Shown here one piece after another: positions 1 through 59,365 of a stretch of 64,000 bases of DNA. Position 1 is the stretch's first letter. Every line of letters starts with the position of its first letter. The notes under the pieces are model-generated. The model did not search any database and was not told the DNA's origin. It was given only the letters and a program-made list of their open reading frames with translations. Source of the DNA: Ylistrum balloti (lineage: Eukaryota); NCBI RefSeq assembly GCF_031769215.1, contig NW_026782196.1:3162001-3226000 (forward strand), given 5' to 3'. A program made the position numbers and the translations under genes.

Positions 1-2187
1 CATAACACAAAATATACACAAATTAATAGCACCTCTAAATAAGAATTAGATACAGTAGAGTCACACAATGAATGAAATTCCATCCTCCACCTTAATTCTG
101 AAACCCAGGAGGCGATATTGGAAAATTAAAACCGACCGAAACAGCCAACAGTCATGGTAGTTATAAGATGTTAACATTGCGGAATTATTTGTTTATTGTG
201 TATCTATCTATCATTATCTATACAGCTGATTTATGAGATTTGGAAGATGTTCATTGTATTTGGTGCATACAGCAAACATATAATTTACTGTTAACCGGAG
301 GAAACATCTATTATTAAAAACTTAATTTTATACCCAAATTATTAGCAAGATTAAACAAAGGAAGATGTTTATTCAGAACAATGTTAAGGATAGTGTTTTG
401 ATACAGGACAATACCTGTGAAGAGTTACACGATACGTAATAAAGGTTTTACATGTGATAAGTATAGCACTGTGTAGGGGTGTTTCTAAATGTATATAGAA
501 TAAGGTTACACGGAGATTTAACATTAATATTTGGAATCACAGTTTGTATATACTGCACTTGGTGTTACGTATATGTTGAGATAATTCCTTTCGTTGTTTG
601 ATTTTGTTGGCATAATCATAAATTTGCTGATAATGCATGTTTAATACATATACATATTTGTAAAATGATAATCAATATGATTCGCATATCATTTATATAG
701 TACATATTTTCATAATATGAAAGATTTTTGCTGAACAGTAGTATGTGTACACACCTGTAACATGTGTGAAATCTTGTTTGCTGTTGAAACCTTGTTCAGA
801 ATCAACTCAGCCATAGCAATACCCTTGTGCAAAGTGACAGGGTATCGCAGTACACGTTAAAATTCCTTACACCAGTGCCATGATAAGCAAATGTCAAAGA
901 AAAATGAGGAATGCGAAACAGCCATGTACCGGGAGTCGTATATACCTTTGTCTTAAGTACGGAAACAAACAGCAACCAAGTAGTACAGTTTAAGTGGCTA
1001 AAATCACCCAATGACAAGACTCACTGGTAATAGCGAGATTTGTATTTTCGAAATAAGCGTGTTTTACGTGCCGCTATCAACTTCCGTAAACAATTTCCAT
1101 TTGTCGTGAGATTGATATGCCCTTGAGTTTACAGGATATTTAAGAAATGACACAGAATTCGACTATCATCACATTATATTCCTACATGGCTGATGAAATA
1201 TTGAATATGAACTGATGATATTAATATCAACAGCTATTTAGATGATTAATTTTATCGATTTTGTGTAATACGTCATTATATTGTGTAAACTTGCACGGAT
1301 TTAACATTCCATGTAGACGTGACGTCACCGCAGGTTGTGATTCCATTTTGCCCTATTCGTTATTTTATACAATATCATAAGTATTCATTTATTTAATCAT
1401 CTTTAGACTGCTTACATACTGAAATGTAGTTTAATGGATAAATGTTAATAGTTTGGGATCATATTAACCAAAAACGGCAATGGAAACATCGCCACTACCG
1501 CGTCACGTGGTCTTGATCGTGACGTCAATAAATTTTACTGTTTGTAATTGTTATTCTGTGATAATGACATCGATGAAGTCCATTTTAGTAACGAAAATGA
1601 GAAAATTTGAAAACGTATTTCATGAAATAGATTCCTGGAATTAATTTCGTAATAGATATGAAGAGCAATGACCATTAATCTAACGAACCTGATGTGTAAC
1701 GAGCAATATACACGCCACTCGAATATTAGTAATAGTCGCACAGCTAATATCCAGTGCTGGCTTATAATTGTGTCAGTGGTAATATGCACAAGGAGCTGTT
1801 GCAAACATATCCCCTCCCTAATGATAGCAACACGACGGAATCTCTGCAACGATCCATGATGGGAAAGTATTTCAATGAACACTCAAAATGCATATTTTCG
1901 GAGTAAGCAACATCTCCTCCACAAATAGGATTGTTACAAAATATCTGTAGCAGAATCAAGATGATGACCTGACGAATTGAATTCTGCTTCCGTCAAACTA
2001 TGATCTGAACGAATACCAAATATAAGGCATATGTTCTCTTTTACCAGCATTACCAGAAACACATCCGTGTGAGAGAGAAGAGAACAAAACTCTAATAAAT
2101 TAGATAGAATATATTAAACTGATGGTAAATCTCCAATGCCGTTTATTACGACAAAATTATCCGAAACTGGAAGCTCAGTACCTCATT

Positions 2188-47647: not shown

Positions 47648-50600
47648 ATGTGTATGGCTGCGCTAAAGAGTTTCAAGACAAAGAGAGACAACTCTAAGCA
47701 AAAACATTTAACTGCCCGCGAGAAAGCAGTTAAAATTAGTAATGGGATGGTCAGTTTTATAAAATTAGAAGTGTATTTTCAATCAAAAGTATATGTTGAT
47801 GGAATCTGATCTCTAAAGCTGATTCAGTAGAATGCATTACACCAATTCGGCGTCATTCACTACACAAGTACATGACATAAAAATTAAATTGCATGATAAA
47901 GATAGCTTACTTTGAAATGTCTTAGGCGTATGGAAATCTGATTGCAGTTTAACGCAGTATAGAATAATTGCACATTTCCTAATATGGAAGGCGGGAACCC
48001 ATCGCAATATATAAAAACTTAAGTGAAATGAAAATAACTACTATGTAAACATGTTATCAATTAGGAAAGCGCAAGACAAGTATCTAGTTAGGCTGATATA
48101 AGGATTTATGGATATAAGGATGATGAAATACTATATCTTGCAATTTTTTATTACATATGGTGAAGGTACAAGAAATAGAACAACCACATTCTCCACTGGA
48201 GAACTTTTTTGTACAAGTGAATCGGGGTATTTATTTTCGTGTCAATTATATCTATTTTACTACACCAACAAAAAATATAATCAGTACTTGAATGAAATTC
48301 CTGTGTTTTTCAAGGTATACATGTCGACAAAGGTGAGTCGCTTTTCGAAGAAGTTGGTTTTTAGTTTTAACATATTTTATTCTCAAGAAAAATACAAGTA
48401 GTATAATTGTTTATGAATTAAACCTTCCGATGGTCTTTATAAATCTGTTTTGTAAATTCAAGCATGCCTGATAATAGACTATCTGAGTTAATTCCATTGT
48501 CTATATTCAAACCTTGAGACATCTCTGACCTCTGGTGTCGATAATTAGGACATTCAAAGAAGAAATGATAGGCGTTTTCACATGGAGAGCCGCAGATACA
48601 GACAGGGTTATCACTAATGTGAACTCTAAATATATCAGTGTACCTAGATTACATGTTTATTTATAGTTGTTAATTGGTATGTATATAGACGTTCATAAAT
48701 ATATATAAAAAAATCATTTCAGTTTTATAGTTTTGATGCTTTACGGCAAAAACCGAAAAACATACCTTTGAATAAACCGCTCTCACATCAAATCGAGGCT
48801 CTATTTGCTCGTGACGTCACAAGGGTAGCATTTGGGACGACCCGCCATGCCAGGTAACTTTCGCGTGTAGACTGTCGAAAATATGTGAAACAGACGTTTG
48901 GTTGTTTAATCTTCATACTTCTCGTCCTGTATTTATATCCTACCATATTTGTGCGTATCAAGTGATATTTATTTTTATTCAAAACGTGCGAAATTCGAAG
49001 TATTAGCTTAACTATGGAAGCGACTCCGACCAACAAACGTTCACGTGGGAAGAGATGTGTAGCGTATGGATGTGGAAACACCACTTTAGACGGTGTTTCA
49101 CTTCATTTTTTCCCATTAGACAGACCGGAAATATGCAAAGTTTGGACTGCATTTGTGCGGAGGAAAAGGGATTTGTGGGACGGGCCAACAAAACATTCAG
49201 TTTTGTGTTCGGAACATTTCGGTGAGGACTGCTACCCGATGCAGTACAGATTTCTTCAATCAATGGGACGTACACCACCGAAAAAGAAAACGCTAATAAA
49301 AGATGCTGTGCCAACGATCAACAAAGGCTGCACCAACGTAGAGGAAACGCCTGTCAAAAGACCACGGACTGCTTTCGCAAAAAGAGAGAACAGAAGGGTA
49401 ATTATTACATAATACATGAAGATCTAGGGCCTATGTATATCATATAAGTTATAGTAGTATCTGAGTAGAAAAGGTAATGAGTAATGCAGCCTTCCTTAGT
49501 GGACAATACTCCTATTTAGCATTTAATAAACCTTTTCCCAGTAAATGTTTCAGTGTATGCGAGGTATCTTCAGTTTTAACTTAAATGTACGTATTAAACA
49601 GCTACACTGTGACTACATGTACATTATTTGTATGATAAATTTGATTTTTTTTTATAGATAGTCGAGCAATGTTTGAAAGAGAGTTCCACGGTATCCACAG
49701 ACACTCAGGTGGAGGAAGATCCTGATGTTTCAGCCAGTGATGAGGTTATGGAATTGCCAGAGGAACATGTACAGACAAGAAATGACCATGATTATTTCTC
49801 CTGCAATTTCAAGGTACTAAAAATGATACTCATAAGGCCAAAAAAATTATATGCGAGTTTACTGTCACCATACCGACCCTAAACTTTTAATTCAGGTTTT
49901 CACACATGCACTGTAAAAGTCAAGGTTGTTGCTCTTATAAAAGTTATGTATAAAACCAGATTTACAGTTATTGCCCTTTATAGTTTTTCTTTGTCCGCAC
50001 CATATTTACAACACTGTTTTACATATATGTAGGAACTCCAAACTTTATGTACAGAATGTTCCATATGTCACAGCAAACTACATGTTTCAAACAACATAAA
50101 TAGTGAAATGGTCTCTGATCTTGTGTGTCAAACATCGCCATGGGCATCTGTTGGGCTCTTGTAAGGTTGGTCAAGGAACATACTTTTTTTCCCACCTTAC
50201 ATATACATAGGTTATGGAGGTTCAACTGTTAATGTACATCATAACTACCGTGTACAAGAAAAGTTTCTATTACAGGAAACACCATCAAAGACAAAAACCT
50301 GTGGCACGCAGCTCTCCCTGAAACCACCCAAGAGGAAAACGGTCAGGATACAAGTGGCCCCCAATGCAGTGGAGAAAGGTAAATTGTAACCTGCTTATGC
50401 ATGTCAATAGGGTCTGTAAGTCTCGTCATGTGACCTGCAAGATTGTGACATTTTGAAAAGTCATAACTGTATGAAAAAATAGAGTATTACCAGTTGGTAC
50501 AATACAGCTGTAAACTGTTTTAAGTACTTGTCCTAATTACAACATTTTAAAATTACTATTCCATTCATTTATTATTTGAATAAATCACAAGACATTTTTA

Positions 50601-53600
50601 CTTGCATTAATGCATTGTGATTTTGTTTTATCTTATAGGATGTCAAACTCGTGCTCCAAGACCAAAGGTGAGACATGCAGAAGTTCAATGTAATCTTCTA
50701 AAGCCAGTGGTGGAGAAAGATGAAGAAACCAACTTGGAAAGTGATAGTGAGTACGAAGATCATCTAGACCTTTTCAAGACCAACAGTAAAGATCTAGACG
50801 ACTCCTATCATCCGGATTCTGGTCCAGACGACTCGGACACAGAGTTAGATATGGAAGAAAATGAGTATGTGTTGTAACATGTCTGACATTTTGCAGAGAA
50901 AAATAATTTATTTTGATACTTTCTGGCTTGTGTTTCGGGACTTTGATATGGCATGCTTTCTCAGTCATATCAATCCATTGTGTGCTAAAACATCATTGCA
51001 TTGCCTTTTTGGATGGCACTTTGATCTAACGGTGTTGTCCCAAGATGGAATAGAACCCTAACCTCAGTCTTGCTTATATCATTTCTCTATAATAATATCA
51101 TGTCATAGTGCCCTCATTCATATTATGGCAATTATGTATGTAGAATGTCATGAACATTTATGTATTGCAGAGATGTGCTACACAGTGGACAGAGCAGAGA
51201 CAGACTCCTCATAATTGAAGAAAGCAAACTGCTTGAACTTTTTGATAAATGTAGACACTGTTTATCACCATGCCAAGGAGAAGTGACACGAATGATCGGT
51301 ACCATGTGTTGTGTGCATCAAGAATGTGACATGTGTGGTAGGACCTTTAAATGGAGAAGCCAGTCAATGGTGGGATCCCTTCCAAGAGGAAATGTCCAGC
51401 TGTCTGCCAGCATTTTATTTTCTGGATCGTTGCCCTCAAAGACTCTAAGAATTTTTAACTTTATGGACATCCCGGTAATATGCCATGACACGTTTTTCAA
51501 GCATCAGCGACATTATTTACAGCCTACAATTCTAAGGATGTGGACAGAAAAACAAGTGCAATATTTTGCAGAAATGTGCAAAAGTGACAATGACATTTGT
51601 ATAGGAGGAGATGGTCGATGCGATACCCCCGGACACTGTGCTAAGTTTTGCAGTTATTCACTGATGGATTTGGACAGAGGGACAGTCGTAGATATACAGT
51701 TAGTTCAGGTTGGTATTTCTAATCGTAAAAATTTAAAAAAAAAAAAAAAAAAAATCCACTCATTATATATTCCACAATTTCTGAGACCAGGCTTAACCAC
51801 TGGACGACTGTGGCCCCCGTTAATTTTATGTAAATTTATATGTAGAAACTGCTGATAGAAAATGTGGTCATGAATACATACAGAAACAATTTCAATATAT
51901 ATATATATATATATCTACAATCTACATGTACTTTCCAGAACATGAGTTATGTTAATTTTGGTACATTGTGTAATGTTAAGATTTTGATCAATTTCAGAGC
52001 AATGAAGTCAAACATAGTGTCAACATGGAAAAGGAAGGGTTAATACGGAGCGTGGACAATCTAAAACGCCATGGGATCAACATAGATACCCTAGTCACCG
52101 ACCGACATGTCCAGATCAGAAAGTGGGTGAGGGAGAACATGACAGAGACCAATCACTGCGTTGATGTATGGCATGTTGCAAAAGGTATTGCATTTTCTTT
52201 AAGTGTTTGTGTTTAGCATAAACAAAACAAGAAGCCCAATCAGTATTAACAGTCACCGTAGTAAATAGTTTGATTTCAGTTTGTTTTGTTTTGCTAAGGG
52301 CTTTACTTCAGATACTTTGTAGACCATGTCCTAAGGACTAAATAAATATCAAATGGAATTAAATGTATGAACACACAACTCAATTTAAAGTATAGAATAA
52401 TTTTTTATGTTAAAATATAATAGGTTTTGTATTAAAATGCATATGAAATATTCTTTAGGTTTGAAGAAGAAGTTGTTGGCACTGTCAAAAGAAAGAGATT
52501 GTGGTGAACTTGAAAGCTGGATAAAAAGTTTAACCAATCACTTATACTGGGTTCCTGCATCAACGCCCTCAGCAGATGGCGCTTTGATGTACCAGAAGTG
52601 GGTTTCTGTAGTAAACCATGTCCAAAATATTCATGATGGTCATGGTGATCTGTTTCCTTGCTGTCTGCATGATGACTTGAGAACACAGGAAAGGAAGAAG
52701 AAATGGATAAAACCAGGTATTTTTCCTGTTATGGCATTGACTCAATTATTGTGTATCCTACCTTTAACTTGCTTACTTATTCATTTGGTTCGAAATTGGT
52801 GACGTATCAATAATTCAAATCATAACTAAATTACGAATGACATTTATCACTTGCTTAAAAACATTTTAAGTGCCTAATTTCTTTAGCAATGACATTTTTC
52901 ACCTGAATGAAAAGCACATCCAGGAAAATGGTATCTTTAGTTTCTTGTTCTTAGCATGGAATTAATATTCGTGTTCTAAATTCCTTATGATCCCATATTA
53001 TATTTTTACTTCATCATTTGAAATCCTCACTTTCACTTTTCAGAGAGTAAAGTAATGGAGAAGCTAGAACTGATGTTGACATCACCACAAATGAAAAAGG
53101 ACATTCCCATGCTATCAACACATCACCAAACTTCAGAACTAGAAGGGTACCACTCAACAGTTAACCAGTTTGCCCCTAAAATGCATGGCTTTTCATTCAA
53201 TGGAATGTTGTGCAGGTATATGATCACATGATTCTCATAAGACTATTATTTCTTTAGACATCAATTTGTACAGACAAGTTGATCGTATATGTATATCTGT
53301 CTCAAGATCTAACATCATCAACAGGTTTTGGAAATATCATTATTCACTAGTAGTCTACCTGTCTCAAAACTCCTGTGGTGAATATTGCAATGTTAAAAGA
53401 GATTTAGTGTTGTAGCTAGATGTAAGATATGTTAAAATGAGTATGTAAAAGATTTAGGCAGCCAGTCTTAATTCTTAAGATATTGATGATACTTAATCAG
53501 GAAAGTTTAAATATTGTTGCATCTCTTTGAATAGGGTGATTCTAGCTGCACTTCACCACAATGAAAATGTGAGAAGAGAACAAGCCATGACATCTGCTGG

Positions 53601-56600
53601 GGAGAAAATGTTTAAGATAATCTACCCTAAACAGAAGAAAGGTGGATACACTGTCAGAAAAGTCAAAACAAAACAAACATTTGGTAAGTATTATGTTGCA
53701 TATGAAGACGAGTTCAATATTTTAGGTTAGGTTCAGTATTCTATATATTGCAGTACATGATTCTTCAATTAACAACTTGCATTTTAGTTGCAGGAAAATA
53801 TGTCCATGTATACAAAACATTTAAAGTCTTTACTAGCAATAATGTCAGATTTTGTGTAATAGTGATTGGAAAAAATAATATAACCAGTGTACTTGTATAT
53901 GTACTTTTTATCTTACAGACTATGTACATGAACTGATGGCAGAAGTGCTACAAGTGGCAGAAAAAAGTACGATGCAAGTGGAGGATATGCTACTTAAAGA
54001 CCAACCCCCACCACTCTGTAGTGATTTTGTCAGACCTGTAAAAATGGAAGCTGTCGCATTGATGGAATCAAGATTTAACTTGAACATTTAAAATACATAC
54101 ATGTACATGAATTTTCATCTTTTTTTTATATGGTCTGCAAGTCTGTTTTACTTTACTTCTGTGTACCAACTGACGTTTTAGGTAGTAGTCTTATAGAAGA
54201 AAAGTATTTTCAATTTCGACAAAATGCACATTTCCCAAGGAGTTTTTAAAAACGTACCTACTGGTAATCCTCCGTTTTCATAGTTATGATTGTTCAAGTT
54301 AAGTGGTATGTTCTAGTAGGTCACATGACGAGACTTACAGATCCTATTACAGTTTCAAGTGTATATATGAATAAAAAACAACAATCAGATATCAATTATA
54401 ATTTTATTGTTTCATGTCATTCTTTCAATGTTTTCAACACATATTTTTAATGCACAAAATTAAAACCTTTAAAATTTCCATTTGGTGCAGGAAATGTTTC
54501 TCTAATAATCTTCACAGCACACGCAGGTAATGGCACTCTTATGCTTTTTCCCAAGTACCCCCAACACCATCTCACAAATTGTCTGTATGCTGTATAGCGG
54601 TATCTCCTGATAAAACAAGAACAATATATTCTGTAATCATTGTTAATGCCAAGTTTGCCATTAATCTGCGGAGGATGCAAGCACTAGTGAATTATGGTAA
54701 ACACAAGTAACTCTACAATACATATGTGTAACAATTCCAAACCAGATTTTCAGAAATGTTGACTTATTATTGAAAATCTATTTTATCTTGTCTGGTTATT
54801 GGTTCTTTTGCAGTATTTTAGACCTGTAACTTGATAGACAAGTTTGTAACATCATTTTTAAAATATCTTCTTAACAAATGAATTATTTTATTATGTTTCA
54901 AGTTTTATAATAATAAATTTGATGCTGTAGATAAACATCATAACTTACTCAGGGCATTCTGGTATCTCTCCATGAAGTTGTCTGTACTGGAAATAAGATG
55001 TTCTCAGCACATAAATATCCAAACAGACTGGCCCAAATCCAGGATGGTCTGTTATGCACTGTATCCCTGGTATGTCGTCTTTTGTGTTCAGTACACTGTG
55101 TATCTCACTACAGCACCTGCACTCCTCAATGGTAGGCATAAGACTGCAGTTACCGCAAAGACACCTGTAACATATAAAATTTTCTGTGTTTTATACATAA
55201 TTCACTAGTATGTTGGTGTGAAAATACCTTTAAAATGTCTTGTTAGAAGTTTTCTATTCAACACTTTATAGTACATACCAGTACCATTTGACATAGCAAA
55301 AGAATACACTTTGTTTCCAGGAAATGTTCTCCTTTGTAAAAAGAAATGCTATGCACATTAATTTATGTAACACAAAATATTTAGGGGTGGGTATTATGTA
55401 AAAGTCAAATAATTGTAAATGCAAAAAAAAGGCATTGGCTGTTATTATCTCGACAAAGTCGGACTTGTGAGGTTGAGCAAGTGGAGAAAAAATCCTGAAA
55501 ATCCGCATTTGTTAACATGCACGATGCATTTTGAAAAGGGAAAATTCCTGGAAAAAAAATAATCATACGTGAAAGCTAACATCTCTGAACATACCAGTCT
55601 AAGGATCCCAGGCGATCAGCATTATCATCGCTACGTGTAGACGACGCAGGTGAAGATGGACTGCTTTCACCATCTACCTCGGGTTCAAATTGGTATGGTT
55701 GAATACCAGCTTGTCTCTCTATAACCTCCGTGTCGTAATCAGAAGATTCAAAGCTTAAATTCAGGCTGCATTCTTCCGAATTGTTTGAGTCTTCGAACCA
55801 CTCGCACTCGCTGTTATCACTGTCCGACATTATCATTTCTTAGACCAAGCGCTACCCTTGTGACGTCACGGGATTTTCCGGTCTGTTAACCGGAAGTTGG
55901 GAAGTGTGTTAATTAGCCTCCATCGACAGGTGCAAACCGGTTCCGAACGGTGAATTTAACGACAAATATCTCAAAAACTAAGCGACAAATTTTGACCGGG
56001 TTTCCGATTTTTTTAATAAGAAAGGAAACATAATTAATATTAATTAATACTATACCGTAATCTAGGTACACTAGGTGAATTACAGTTATACCGTATTTTT
56101 TGTTATGAATAATGTTTAGTTTGCGCTCAACATATCCAGTGTAACTGGGGGAAAATATCTTTTGATTTCGTGAAATGGAGTTTTTAAATTTTCTGCAAGT
56201 TGTTGACGATCTAGCAGCAGCATCAAGTTTAATCCAAGAACAAAGAGCAGCAAGAAGAAAGGATGAATTAATAGAGGAAAGTCAGAAATTTGGTAAGATA
56301 AAATCGTTGGCATTTCTTAATTATTATTCTGGGAAATAGTAGAGACACCTAACAGATAAGGAAATTGAGAATGAAACATTATTCAGGGAAATAGTAGAGA
56401 CACCTAACAGATAAGGAAAGTTGGAATGAAACATTATTCTGGGAAACAGTAGAGACACCTAACAGATAAGGAAAGTGAGAATGAAACATTATTCAGGGAA
56501 ATAGTAGAGACACCTAACAGATCAGGAAAGCTGGAATGAAACATTATTCTGGGAAATAGTAGAGACACCTAACAGATAAGGAAAGTGAGAATGAAACATT

Positions 56601-59365
56601 ATTCAGGGAAATAGTAGACACCTAACAGATAAGGAAATACAAAAGATACAGGGGAAAATACATATAAAAAAAGATTTGTGAACTTGCAACAAATTTTCTT
56701 TATAACTAATGAACTGGCCGTGGTATAGCGGTAAAGTGATTTATACATATATATGTATATTGGTAAGTAACTTCAAAATCAATAATCAATATCAAAAGAC
56801 CTGTAGTGGAATTCATTCGTGCATTCATTTTACAGGAAACTCTTTTAGGAAACAATATAAATTACCAATGGAAGATTTCATAAATACTTGTACCTGGATG
56901 ACGTGACTTCATGGGAACGTACGAACATACTACTTTGATATAATCACTTATTCAGAGTAGGGTCCCTTTCCACACGGAAAATACAAGCGTTACACCGTTT
57001 CACTGTTCCAAGCATTCAGCTGGTCAGCAGTTAATGACATCCCGTCCCTAGTAAGTTAACTTTCTCAAAAACACTCCTTCCATTTATAAAAAAATAGTTC
57101 CACTTCCCCGTCCGTGCAAGAATGGTCCCGTCGTTAAATTAGAACTGGCACATGTTCACTAATGCATGTCAACGAGGAGTATGGAAGTAAAGTTGTACAT
57201 ACTATTATCATTCTAAAAAGTGTTAAATATATTAAACACTGACAGTGTACGGACTACAACAGACATTGTGTAATAATATCAAAGTATTCGTGTCATTCCT
57301 AGTAAAAAGATACAGTTTAAGTAGTAACACACGATGCGGTTTTAATCGGTAAAAGTGTTAATAAGTTGACATTAAATCAGTTATTAGTTCAGTGTACAAA
57401 ACGAAAACAAATATTAACTGGAAAAGTCTAGAAAATATGTACTTCGCCAGCTAAACAGACATATGGTGATTATACAAAAACAAATATTTCTTGTCGGTAT
57501 ATGAAATATACCTGTTTAAACCGACAGTCTTTATAGTTAACTTATCCTCCAGACATGACAAGAATATCTTTACTTATCCGGATATAATAGACCGGTTGTG
57601 GTAAAACAAAAACATTGTGATTCAAGGTTTCCAAATAAGGTGGAGACTTTCTACAAAGACAGATTATGAAAAAAGACATTTTCAGGTCAAGACAAAATCA
57701 CTGTTTAATTTCCCGTTGAATATGTCAGAAGATATGAAAACAGTATATCATAGCGTACATATTTTATGCATCTGTATGAAACTGAAAACCCCTTCAATTC
57801 GACAATCTTTGAAAAGCGAATATTATTTGCCAGTTCAAAACAAAGTAGTAATAAAACATAATATACAAAGTTATGTAAATGTAAACGACGAAACCTGTCT
57901 ACACTGAATAGCAGTAAAAAACGGATTTCATATATATATATATATATATATGTACATGCAAAAGATGAGACACTTTGTACATTAGTACAATAAGATTAAA
58001 CCTGTCTTCAACAGACAACTGTGACTCTGACTTCACTGAAAACCTCTGAAATACGGTTATCAACCGAACCAGACACAATGTATGGAAACAAAATACTGNN
58101 NNNNNNNNNNNNNNNNNNNNNNNNNNNNNNNNNNNNNNNNNNNNNNNNNNNNNNNNNNNNNNNNNNNNNNNNNNNNNNNNNNNNNNNNNNNNNNNNNNNN
58201 NNNNNNNNNNNNNNNNNNNNNNNNNNNNNNNNNNNGTGTGATGAAACCTGACTACACTGACAACCTGTGCTAAACGGCTTTCAACCGAATTATCTGGAAA
58301 CAAAATGTATTGTAATATACCATGCACAGTGATATTTATATATATATGATGATGGTGAAACCTGACTTCACCGACAACCTGTACTAAACGGCTTTCAACC
58401 GAATTATCTGGAAACAGAATGTATTGTTCAATAGAGTAACCTTATGGTTTAAGCTAACCAAGCTTGGTGTCAGAGATAAATTTTTGACGACCAATAAATC
58501 CCTTTATTCATTAGTTACGTCATGTGTTTTAGTTAATGGAAAACGTTCATTTTTTTTTCACTAATAATGTCGGATTGATGCAAGGGGAAATTTTCATCCC
58601 CCTTTACTTTTTTCATTGTTCATTAATGATTTTGAAAACGAGTTTATTGAAAATGGTGCAACATGTTATGATTTTGGGGAATTGAGATTATTTTTATTAT
58701 TATATGCAGATGACTTGGTTTTATTCTCGGAAACAGTCGAAGGTTTGAAAAGTCTTTTGGACAATTTATGCAATTACTCAAAAAATGAAAATTATCAGTT
58801 AATACCAATAAAACAAAAATTGTTGTTTTCAGAAATGGTGGGCGTATTAAGGAATCAGAATACTGGAGGTATGATGGTAACCTCATTTCGGTAGTTGATC
58901 AGTTTTGTTACTTAGGATTTTTGCTAAGGTTTGATAACAAATATGGTAGTATGGTAAAACATTTAGCTGACCAAGGTCGTAAAGCACTTTTTGCTTTGCG
59001 TTTCAGTTTTATTTAACCAAATATTTACCAAAACAGCGCAGAATTGTTATCTCTAAACTTCGTTTATCAGCTCATAACCTAGCTACAGAAACTGGTAGAT
59101 ATAGAAATACTGATGGGAATAATAGACTTTGTAATAATTGTGACCTATTAGAAGTAGAAGATGAATTCCATTTTCTTTTTACCTGTTCCATACATTCCGA
59201 TCTTAGGAGAAAATACATTAAACAATACTACTGGTATCAGCCATCTGTTTTCAAAGTTATAGAATTATTGAACACACATAATTTGAAAGATTTGAATTTA
59301 CTGGGCAAATACATTATTGAAGCGAACAAACGTAGAAGTATTTTTTTTCTTATGTTTTTTGTTGT

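What the first reader, a model, noticed from the sequence alone, without database searches (positions are those of the whole stretch)
48810..55870. Twin 20-bp CRE-containing motif heads both convergent transposon genes
CGTGACGTCACAAGGGTAGC is perfectly repeated in inverted orientation about 173 and 202 bp inside the two ends, while surrounding sequence is unrelated. Each copy lies 14-20 nt upstream of an ATG. One motif could therefore co-regulate transposase and KolX through host ATF/CREB (TGACGTCA) and also serve as a THAP-bound subterminal site, coupling expression to transposition. That function is a hypothesis.
Basis: partly seen in the sequence, partly recalled or inferred. Interest (0 to 1): 0.7.

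Follow-up and report, generated by a model that had tools for sequence, protein, structure and literature searches.

The report
Conserved twin CRE box in Koloboks
A 20-base box, made of a classic cAMP-response element plus a G-rich half, sits just in front of both genes of this scallop "Kolobok" jumping gene; the same box lies at the same place in eight other distantly related Kolobok families, so it is a selected control site, not chance.

Summary
The 20-mer occurs exactly twice in 64 kb, inverted, 173 and 202 bp inside the ends of a 7,436-bp two-gene Kolobok (48637-56072). A second, TTAA-flanked copy in Ylistrum balloti fixes those ends.

The new result is comparative. In nine Kol0-type families (16 ends, THAP exons 38-60% identical), a CRE octamer or half-site followed at once by a G-rich half lies on the inward side of each end. 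It is 161-268 bp from the tip, and 171-175 bp in 8 of 16 ends. In families with short inverted repeats, only the tip and this box survive between the two ends.

ETS, GC-box or CCAAT motifs cluster just tip-ward of the box. The KolX start codon follows it by 13-27 nt in four families. The box therefore lies at or just after the transcription start, not at a classical -50 position.

My best reading is a shared start-proximal promoter box with a host bZIP site. Its family-specific half plausibly binds the transposase THAP domain. No binding and no start site were measured. The left ATG is not the transposase start codon.

Earlier notes of this scan describe other Koloboks in this genome, but not this box.

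The parts
48637..56072 (.). Whole Kol0-type Kolobok element (7,436 bp), family 'A'
   Evidence: Homology to the second copy L001 (Ylistrum balloti, internally deleted, 99.8-99.9% identical) starts and stops exactly at these coordinates. L001 is flanked by TTAA on both sides. Loose ends at 48637 in three DNA runs end in TTAA.
48637..48652 (+). Left tip, 16-nt terminal inverted repeat beginning AG
   Evidence: (I3). The RR terminus is as described for Kolobok (PMC9587614).
56057..56072 (-). Right tip, 16-nt terminal inverted repeat
   Evidence: (I3).
48810..48835 (+). Left box: 20 nt exact (48810-48829), 26 nt at 92%. It holds the CRE octamer at 48812-48819, then the G-rich half.
55845..55870 (-). 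Right box: 20 nt exact (55851-55870). It holds the CRE octamer at 55861-55868, then the G-rich half.
55876..55896 (-). Pair of ETS-like CCGGAA cores just tip-ward of the right box
   Evidence: A similar pair, with the same spacer to the CRE, is present in family G.
48854..49006 (+). Putative first intron of the transposase gene (inferred). This would make the box part of a short 5' leader exon.
   Evidence: The only AGGTRA donor in the leader is at 48853|48854, and an AG acceptor lies at 49005-49006. The spliced-RNA run X6 has no depth at 48400-48999, and its contig over the THAP exon starts at 49008. The joint itself was not observed.
49014..54091 (+). THAP-DDE transposase gene. The THAP exon coding part is 49014-49397. 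Later exon ends and starts are 49813, 50276-50378, 50639, 51708, 51998-52184, 52459-52716, 53044-53215, 53535-53683 and 53919.
   Evidence: Pfam THAP 8.8e-15, with weak Mutator-like hits on the core exons. Seven GT..AG joints are seen in contigs of run X6. The exon 2/3 joint comes from the NCBI model P0001.
54450..55836 (-). KolX gene (P2X7 'ballast' domain), three coding pieces, start codon 14 nt after the right box
   Evidence: Pfam P2RX7_C 6.7e-9 on the last exon. A 205-aa NCBI model sits at the equivalent place in L001. KolX is described in PMC9587614.

Best explanation
The twin motif is a conserved, bipartite cis-element of Kol0-type Kolobok transposons. It lies at the inner edge of what was ancestrally a long terminal inverted repeat, and it points inward at both ends. 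The first half is a cAMP-response-type palindrome (TGACGTCA, or at least one half-site). It most likely binds a host bZIP factor of the CREB/ATF group. Together with ETS, GC-box or CCAAT sites just outside it, it forms the proximal promoter that starts transcription of both convergent genes at or within a few bases of the box. That gives the transposase and KolX one common control. The second, G-rich half (consensus about AAGGGGAAC) differs between families but matches at the two ends of each element. It resembles known THAP sites and the element's own tip. It is probably the subterminal binding site of the transposase THAP domain. Bound there, the transposase would sit on the start region of both genes, where it could repress them, as is known for the P element. 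Shown here: the box, its conservation, its position and its promoter-like surroundings. Inferred: who binds it, where transcription starts, and any feedback.
For: The box is exact and unique in the window.

It is present in 16 ends of 9 families from Ylistrum balloti, Mizuhopecten yessoensis, two sets of Logan runs and three ENA assemblies. An ungapped alignment of 15 ends gives ACGT invariant and a consensus of G-TGACGTCA-C-AAGGGGAAC.

These elements are Kol0 Koloboks. KolX exons 2-3 are found in all six other two-ended families, and the transposase core in three.

The hits were not cherry-picked: 14 of the 17 CRE half-site hexamers inside the seven two-ended elements are the boxes.

In families A, D and G the two ends are otherwise unrelated (z = -0.5, -1.5, +0.9). 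In B, E and H the box lies inside 211-257-bp inverted repeats, and in B the repeat ends exactly at the box.

ETS, GC-box or CCAAT motifs occur within 60 nt tip-ward of the CRE in 12 of 15 ends, against 11% of internal windows (p about 1e-9).

The KolX ATG follows the octamer by 13, 19, 24 and 27 nt in B, D, A and F.

The transposase gene is transcribed and correctly spliced.

Published THAP sites carry a GGG or GTG core: hTHAP1 AGTACGGGCAA and P transposase GTTAAGTGGA. THAP sites of P and Galileo are subterminal.
Against: No transcription start was observed.

The box is only 13-27 nt from the KolX ATG, so it sits at or after the start site, which is unusual for a CRE.

Four ends carry only a half-site or a variant octamer (families E, F-THAP side and G-THAP side).

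There is one box per end and no array of G-rich sites, unlike Galileo.

The tight 171-175-bp spacing from the tip in 8 of 16 ends is not needed for a promoter. It points to a role in the transposition complex.

The resemblance of the G-rich half to THAP sites and to the tips is loose, and was not shown to co-vary beyond shared ancestry.

Ends within long inverted repeats are not independent data points.
Confidence: 0.5

Rival explanations
1. The box is a cis-element of transposition only. It would be a subterminal site where the transposase, KolX or a host architectural protein binds to build the paired-end complex. Its place in front of the genes would follow merely from the compact layout of the element, and the CRE look would be incidental to a dimeric binding site.
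For: The spacing from the tip is tightly clustered: 171-175 bp in 8 of 16 ends from 6 families whose intervening sequence cannot be aligned. The box has the same orientation relative to the tip at both ends. Internally deleted copies keep both boxes. P elements have single inverted 11-bp subterminal repeats and internal THAP sites with a comparable layout.
Against: The invariant half is exactly the host CRE consensus, and every end keeps at least one half-site. Classical promoter motifs are enriched just outside it. The remaining spacings vary from 161 to 268 bp. Deletion derivatives keep several hundred bp of each end anyway, so their retention of the box says little.
Confidence: 0.25
2. The box is a host-only promoter. 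The CRE binds a bZIP factor, and the G-rich half is the initiator region or the site of a second host factor. The transposase has no part in it.
For: The promoter context is as above. There is only one G-rich site per end. The G-rich half has a common core across families, as a host site would.
Against: The G-rich half differs between families while being identical at the two ends within each family, over 10-15 nt. That is more than an initiator needs, and it is the pattern expected of an element-encoded partner. It also resembles the tips.
Confidence: 0.17
3. The box works at the RNA level. Because it is inverted at convergent genes, both mRNAs would carry the same sense sequence in their 5' leaders, for example as a translation-control or small-RNA target site.
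For: If transcription starts tip-ward of the box, both leaders contain it. It lies 13-27 nt before the KolX ATG in four families.
Against: The leaders of five ends show no shared or unusually stable fold (z = -1.0 to +0.95, with different structures). An 8-10-nt perfect palindrome is a mark of a dimeric double-stranded-DNA site, not of a hairpin.
Confidence: 0.05
4. The box is a neutral relic: the last surviving piece of an old long inverted repeat, or a product of gene conversion between ends, with no function.
For: Families B, E and H still have 211-257-bp inverted repeats that include the box.
Against: The same block survives in nine families whose ends are otherwise unalignable, and independently at both ends of A, D and G. 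Chance survival of the same 17-20 nt each time is not credible.
Confidence: 0.03

Closest known systems
Kol0 lineage of Kolobok DNA transposons (Kolobok-1_XT type, two genes: transposase and KolX) and their T2-MITE relatives
   Same: TTAA target duplication in all 15 non-window ends. Tips begin AG (AGGRR-like). There is a THAP-bearing transposase and a convergent KolX gene with the P2X7 ballast domain.
   Different: The papers I could read describe tips, target sites and proteins, but no subterminal box or promoter. The words promoter and subterminal are absent from PMC9587614 and PMC6004289.
Drosophila P element ends: 31-bp inverted repeats, internal 10-bp THAP transposase sites, 11-bp subterminal inverted repeats
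   Same: A THAP transposase of a related superfamily. There is a single short inverted site well inside each end, separate from the tip (sites at 41-63 bp). From my own knowledge (Kaufman and Rio), the 5' site overlaps the P promoter, and transposase or KP represses transcription there.
   Different: The Kolobok box lies further in (161-268 bp). It carries a host CRE palindrome, heads two genes rather than one, and its binding protein is unknown.
Galileo (P superfamily) THAP sites inside long inverted repeats
   Same: THAP sites lie in family-specific parts of long inverted repeats, outside the conserved tip. This is like families B, E and H here.
   Different: Galileo has several sites per end, shown by footprinting. 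Here there is one box per end and no binding data.
cAMP response element (CRE, TGACGTCA) of cellular and viral promoters, bound by CREB/ATF bZIP dimers. The HTLV-1 Tax-responsive elements are a composite example (own knowledge).
   Same: A full palindromic octamer in 12 of 16 ends and a half-site in the rest. It sits next to ETS, GC-box or CCAAT motifs. In HTLV-1, a viral protein contacts G/C-rich flanks of a CRE beside CREB, which parallels the proposed CRE plus THAP pairing.
   Different: The position is at or just after the likely start site rather than about 50-150 bp upstream. No bZIP binding was tested. The parallel with Tax is an analogy only.

Membership tests
Kolobok superfamily, Kol0 lineage | TTAA target-site duplication | tested here: inconclusive
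   Met in the sister copy L001, in other copies seen as loose ends and in all other families. Not met in the window copy, whose flanks read TATC and AGGT.
Kolobok superfamily, Kol0 lineage | Termini 5'-RR ... YY-3' | tested here: met
   The element begins AG and ends CT. The definition is from PMC9587614.
Kolobok superfamily, Kol0 lineage | DDD/E transposase (here with an N-terminal THAP domain) | tested here: inconclusive
   THAP is clear (8.8e-15). The core gives only sub-threshold Mutator-like Pfam hits, but it is 36-64% identical to the cores of families B, E and G. Catalytic residues were not mapped.
Kolobok superfamily, Kol0 lineage | Second gene KolX with the P2X7 cytoplasmic ballast fold | tested here: met
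   Pfam P2RX7_C 6.7e-9, above its cut-off. The description is in PMC9587614.
cAMP response element (CRE) | Palindromic TGACGTCA or a TGACG/CGTCA half-site | tested here: met
cAMP response element (CRE) | Lies in a promoter, upstream of the transcription start | tested here: inconclusive
   Promoter motifs lie beside it, but no start site is known. The KolX ATG 13-27 nt after the box places it at or after the start.
cAMP response element (CRE) | Bound and driven by CREB/ATF bZIP proteins | not testable with these tools
   Needs a band shift, ChIP or a reporter assay.
THAP-domain binding site of a transposase | About 10 nt with a GGG or GTG core, as in published THAP sites | tested here: inconclusive
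   The G-rich half has a GGG, GGT or GTG core in all ends. This is a resemblance only.
THAP-domain binding site of a transposase | Present at both ends, inverted, subterminal | tested here: met
THAP-domain binding site of a transposase | Bound by the element's own THAP domain | not testable with these tools
   Needs a band shift or footprint with the expressed domain.

The most novel reading that the evidence does not exclude
The box is a composite docking site, kept over long evolutionary time, where a host CREB/ATF dimer and the element's own THAP transposase bind side by side at a fixed distance (about 172 bp) from each tip. One 20-bp site would then start transcription of both genes, shut it off when transposase accumulates, and mark the ends for assembly of the transposition complex.
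Probability: 0.25. Interest if true: 0.7.

Novelty: new variant of a known kind. Interest (0 to 1): 0.55.

Why it matters
Kolobok is one of the least studied superfamilies of cut-and-paste transposons. No member has been studied biochemically, and the role of its second gene, KolX (the likely ancestor of the P2X7 receptor's ballast domain), is unknown.

A short box conserved across nine families gives the first concrete handle on how these elements are expressed and recognised. It names a candidate host factor (CREB/ATF) and a candidate THAP site. It also implies that the transposase and KolX are under one control, which argues that KolX acts together with the transposase.

The family in this window is young, multi-copy, transcribed and correctly spliced, so the predictions can be tested directly in scallop material or in a heterologous reporter.

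Tried and rejected
- Exact look-up of the window's THAP exon found nothing. Relatives were reached through the word search instead.
- The search with the first KolX exon gave only two hits, both of family B.
- No run on record as RNA holds the element. One run labelled DNA turned out to carry spliced contigs, but it does not cover the box.
- I looked for arrays of the G-rich half within the ends, as in Galileo, and found none.
- An RNA-structure reading of the leaders was rejected.
- The other three CRE octamers in the window (1320, 1520, 13549) lack the G-rich half and are not Kolobok ends.
- Pfam did not recognise the short KolX and core exons of families B, E and H. A local tblastn did.
- The findings search by sequence, and by the octamer as a word, returned nothing.
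- A splice donor just after the box is not general. In family F it cannot be used, because no acceptor lies before the ATG.
- I did not test co-variation of THAP residues with the G-rich half. Nine related families cannot separate it from shared ancestry.
- No contig looked human, and the N run at 58099-58235 was left alone.
Full report
**The observation**

The 20-mer stands at 48810-48829 on the plus strand and at 55851-55870 on the minus strand. Even with three mismatches allowed there is no other match in the 64-kb window, and shuffles give none. The inverted match runs on to 26 nt at 92%. The full CRE octamer TGACGTCA occurs five times in the window against about one expected. The other three sites lack the second half of the motif.

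**The element**

- The plus strand carries a THAP exon (Pfam 8.8e-15) and core exons with weak Mutator-like similarity.
- The minus strand carries a gene whose last exon is a P2RX7_C domain (6.7e-9).
- This is the two-gene Kol0 type of Kolobok, whose second protein, KolX, has been described as a free-standing P2X7 ballast domain (PMC9587614).
- The word search found a 98%-identical THAP protein annotated in Ylistrum balloti. Its locus, L001, holds an internally deleted copy. L001 9624-10715 equals window 48637-49728, and L001 10716-13348 equals window 53437-56072, at 99.8-99.9% identity.
- That copy is flanked by TTAA on both sides and begins AG and ends CT.
- DNA contigs of three runs diverge at 48637 into different flanks that end in TTAA.
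- The window copy itself has no TTAA: its flanks read TATC and AGGT. I cannot explain this.

**Expression**

No run on record as RNA holds the element. However, one small run of a second organism label (X6) carries contigs with seven GT..AG joints that define the transposase exons. The gene is therefore transcribed and correctly spliced.

X6 has no depth at 48400-48999. Its contig over the THAP exon starts at 49008, one base after an AG acceptor at 49005-49006. The only good donor in the leader is at 48853|48854, 24 nt after the box. This suggests, but does not show, a short leader exon that contains the box. The ATG at 48847 would then open a three-codon reading frame ending just before the true start at 49014.

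**Conservation**

Copies of family A are too alike to be informative, so I fetched more distant relatives through their THAP exons and first KolX exons.

Eight further families were obtained:
- D from Ylistrum;
- F from Mizuhopecten yessoensis;
- C and I from two sets of Logan runs (left ends only);
- B, E, G and H from three ENA assemblies of unidentified animals.

Their THAP exons are 38-60% identical to that of the window. KolX exons 2-3 are present in all six that have two ends, and the transposase core in three.

Every one of the 16 ends carries the box, on the inward side and in inward orientation. The box is a CRE octamer (perfect in 12) or a half-site, followed at once by a G-rich half. 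The 15 ends aligned need no gaps. ACGT is invariant, and the consensus reads G, the octamer, C, then AAGGGGAAC. Of the 17 CRE half-site hexamers inside the seven two-ended elements, 14 are the boxes, so the pattern was not picked out of noise.

**Selection rather than descent**

In families B, E and H the ends are long inverted repeats of 257, about 230 and 211 bp that include the box. In B the repeat ends exactly at the last base of the box. In A, D and G the ends have drifted apart, and between tip and box they are no more alike than shuffled sequence (z = -0.5, -1.5, +0.9). Only the tip and the box are held.

The first half is the same in all families. The second half differs between families but matches between the two ends of each element.

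**Position**

The octamer lies 161-268 bp from the tip. Eight of the 16 ends, from six families, fall at 171-175 bp although the sequence between cannot be aligned.

The KolX start codon follows the octamer by 13, 19, 24 and 27 nt in B, D, A and F, and by 53-138 nt in H, E and G. Transcription of KolX must therefore start within or tip-ward of the box. The box is at the start site or in the leader, not at a classical upstream position.

ETS, GC-box or CCAAT motifs lie within 60 nt tip-ward of the octamer in 12 of 15 ends, against 11% of internal windows. Counting each long repeat once, this is still 9 of 12. On the KolX side, families A and G share a pair of CCGG-cored ETS-like sites with the same short spacer to the CRE.

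**Reading**

These facts fit a shared start-proximal promoter whose fixed part is a host bZIP site.

The family-specific half behaves as the site of an element-encoded partner would. It has a GGG, GGT or GTG core like the published sites of human THAP1 and the P transposase. It also resembles each family's own tip. THAP sites of P and Galileo are likewise subterminal and separate from the tip.

Against a simple picture stand three points:
- there is one site per end and no arrays;
- the box is unusually close to the start codon;
- the conserved spacing from the tip is a feature a promoter does not need, and it speaks for a part in the transposition complex.

An RNA-level role is unlikely, because the leaders have no common or unusually stable fold.

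I put 0.5 on the promoter-plus-THAP reading, 0.25 on a purely transpositional site, 0.17 on a host-only promoter, and small odds on the rest.

**Novelty**

The two Kolobok papers I could read do not mention a promoter or a subterminal motif. A text search for the octamer together with transposase, terminal inverted repeat and promoter found nothing relevant. Earlier notes of this scan cover other Koloboks of this genome but not the box. In kind, the box is a variant of what is known from P elements. As a conserved feature of Kol0 Koloboks it appears to be undescribed.

**Limits**

- Binding, start sites and function are inferred.
- Three host animals are unidentified.
- Ends within long repeats are not independent.
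- Families C and I have one end only.
- Only single exons were used.

Noticed in passing
window 48633-48636 and 56073-56076: The full-length window copy has no TTAA on either side; its flanks read TATC and AGGT. The sister copy, other copies seen in reads and all 15 ends of other families are TTAA-flanked. This may reflect aberrant insertion, later rearrangement or an assembly fault.
   Followed up: partly
window 50406-50500 and 54254-54348: A 95-nt inverted repeat (77%, with a 37-nt core at 92%) lies inside the element. One arm is in the intron 50379-50638. The other is in the stretch after the transposase stop, where the two genes' 3' ends meet. In the pre-mRNA the arms could pair around the catalytic exons. 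Only the second arm is kept in the deleted copy L001.
   Followed up: partly
run X6 on window 49008-54334: A run listed as 'DNA?' (22 million letters, organism label B) carries contigs with seven GT..AG joints. It is therefore RNA or cDNA, and it gives the only expression evidence for this element.
   Followed up: yes
9 families, 16 ends (A, C, E, F, H, I at 171-175 bp): The distance from the tip to the CRE octamer is 171-175 bp in 8 of 16 ends although the sequence between cannot be aligned. This is about one nucleosome repeat. The cause is unknown.
   Followed up: partly
window 48847-48853 with 49007-49011: If the predicted leader intron is removed, the ATG after the left box opens a three-codon reading frame whose stop lies 2 nt before the transposase ATG. 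That would be a possible re-initiation arrangement.
   Followed up: no
window 48402-48613: The left flank of the element is itself a high-copy repeat, with many variant contigs and a depth 5-20 times that of the single-copy contig beside it.
   Followed up: no
window 1320-1327 and 1520-1527: Two full CRE octamers lie 200 bp apart, the second next to a CACGTG box, without the Kolobok G-rich half. This may be a host promoter.
   Followed up: no
L007/L009 9868 versus L010 9745: One copy of family B has lost the outer 127 bp of its KolX-side inverted repeat, so it lacks that tip but keeps the box and both genes.
   Followed up: partly
L011 about 9640: The left end of family D holds, about 90 bp inside its own tip, a second TTAA-AGAG tip-like sequence resembling the tip of family F. 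It may be a remnant of a nested or hybrid end.
   Followed up: no
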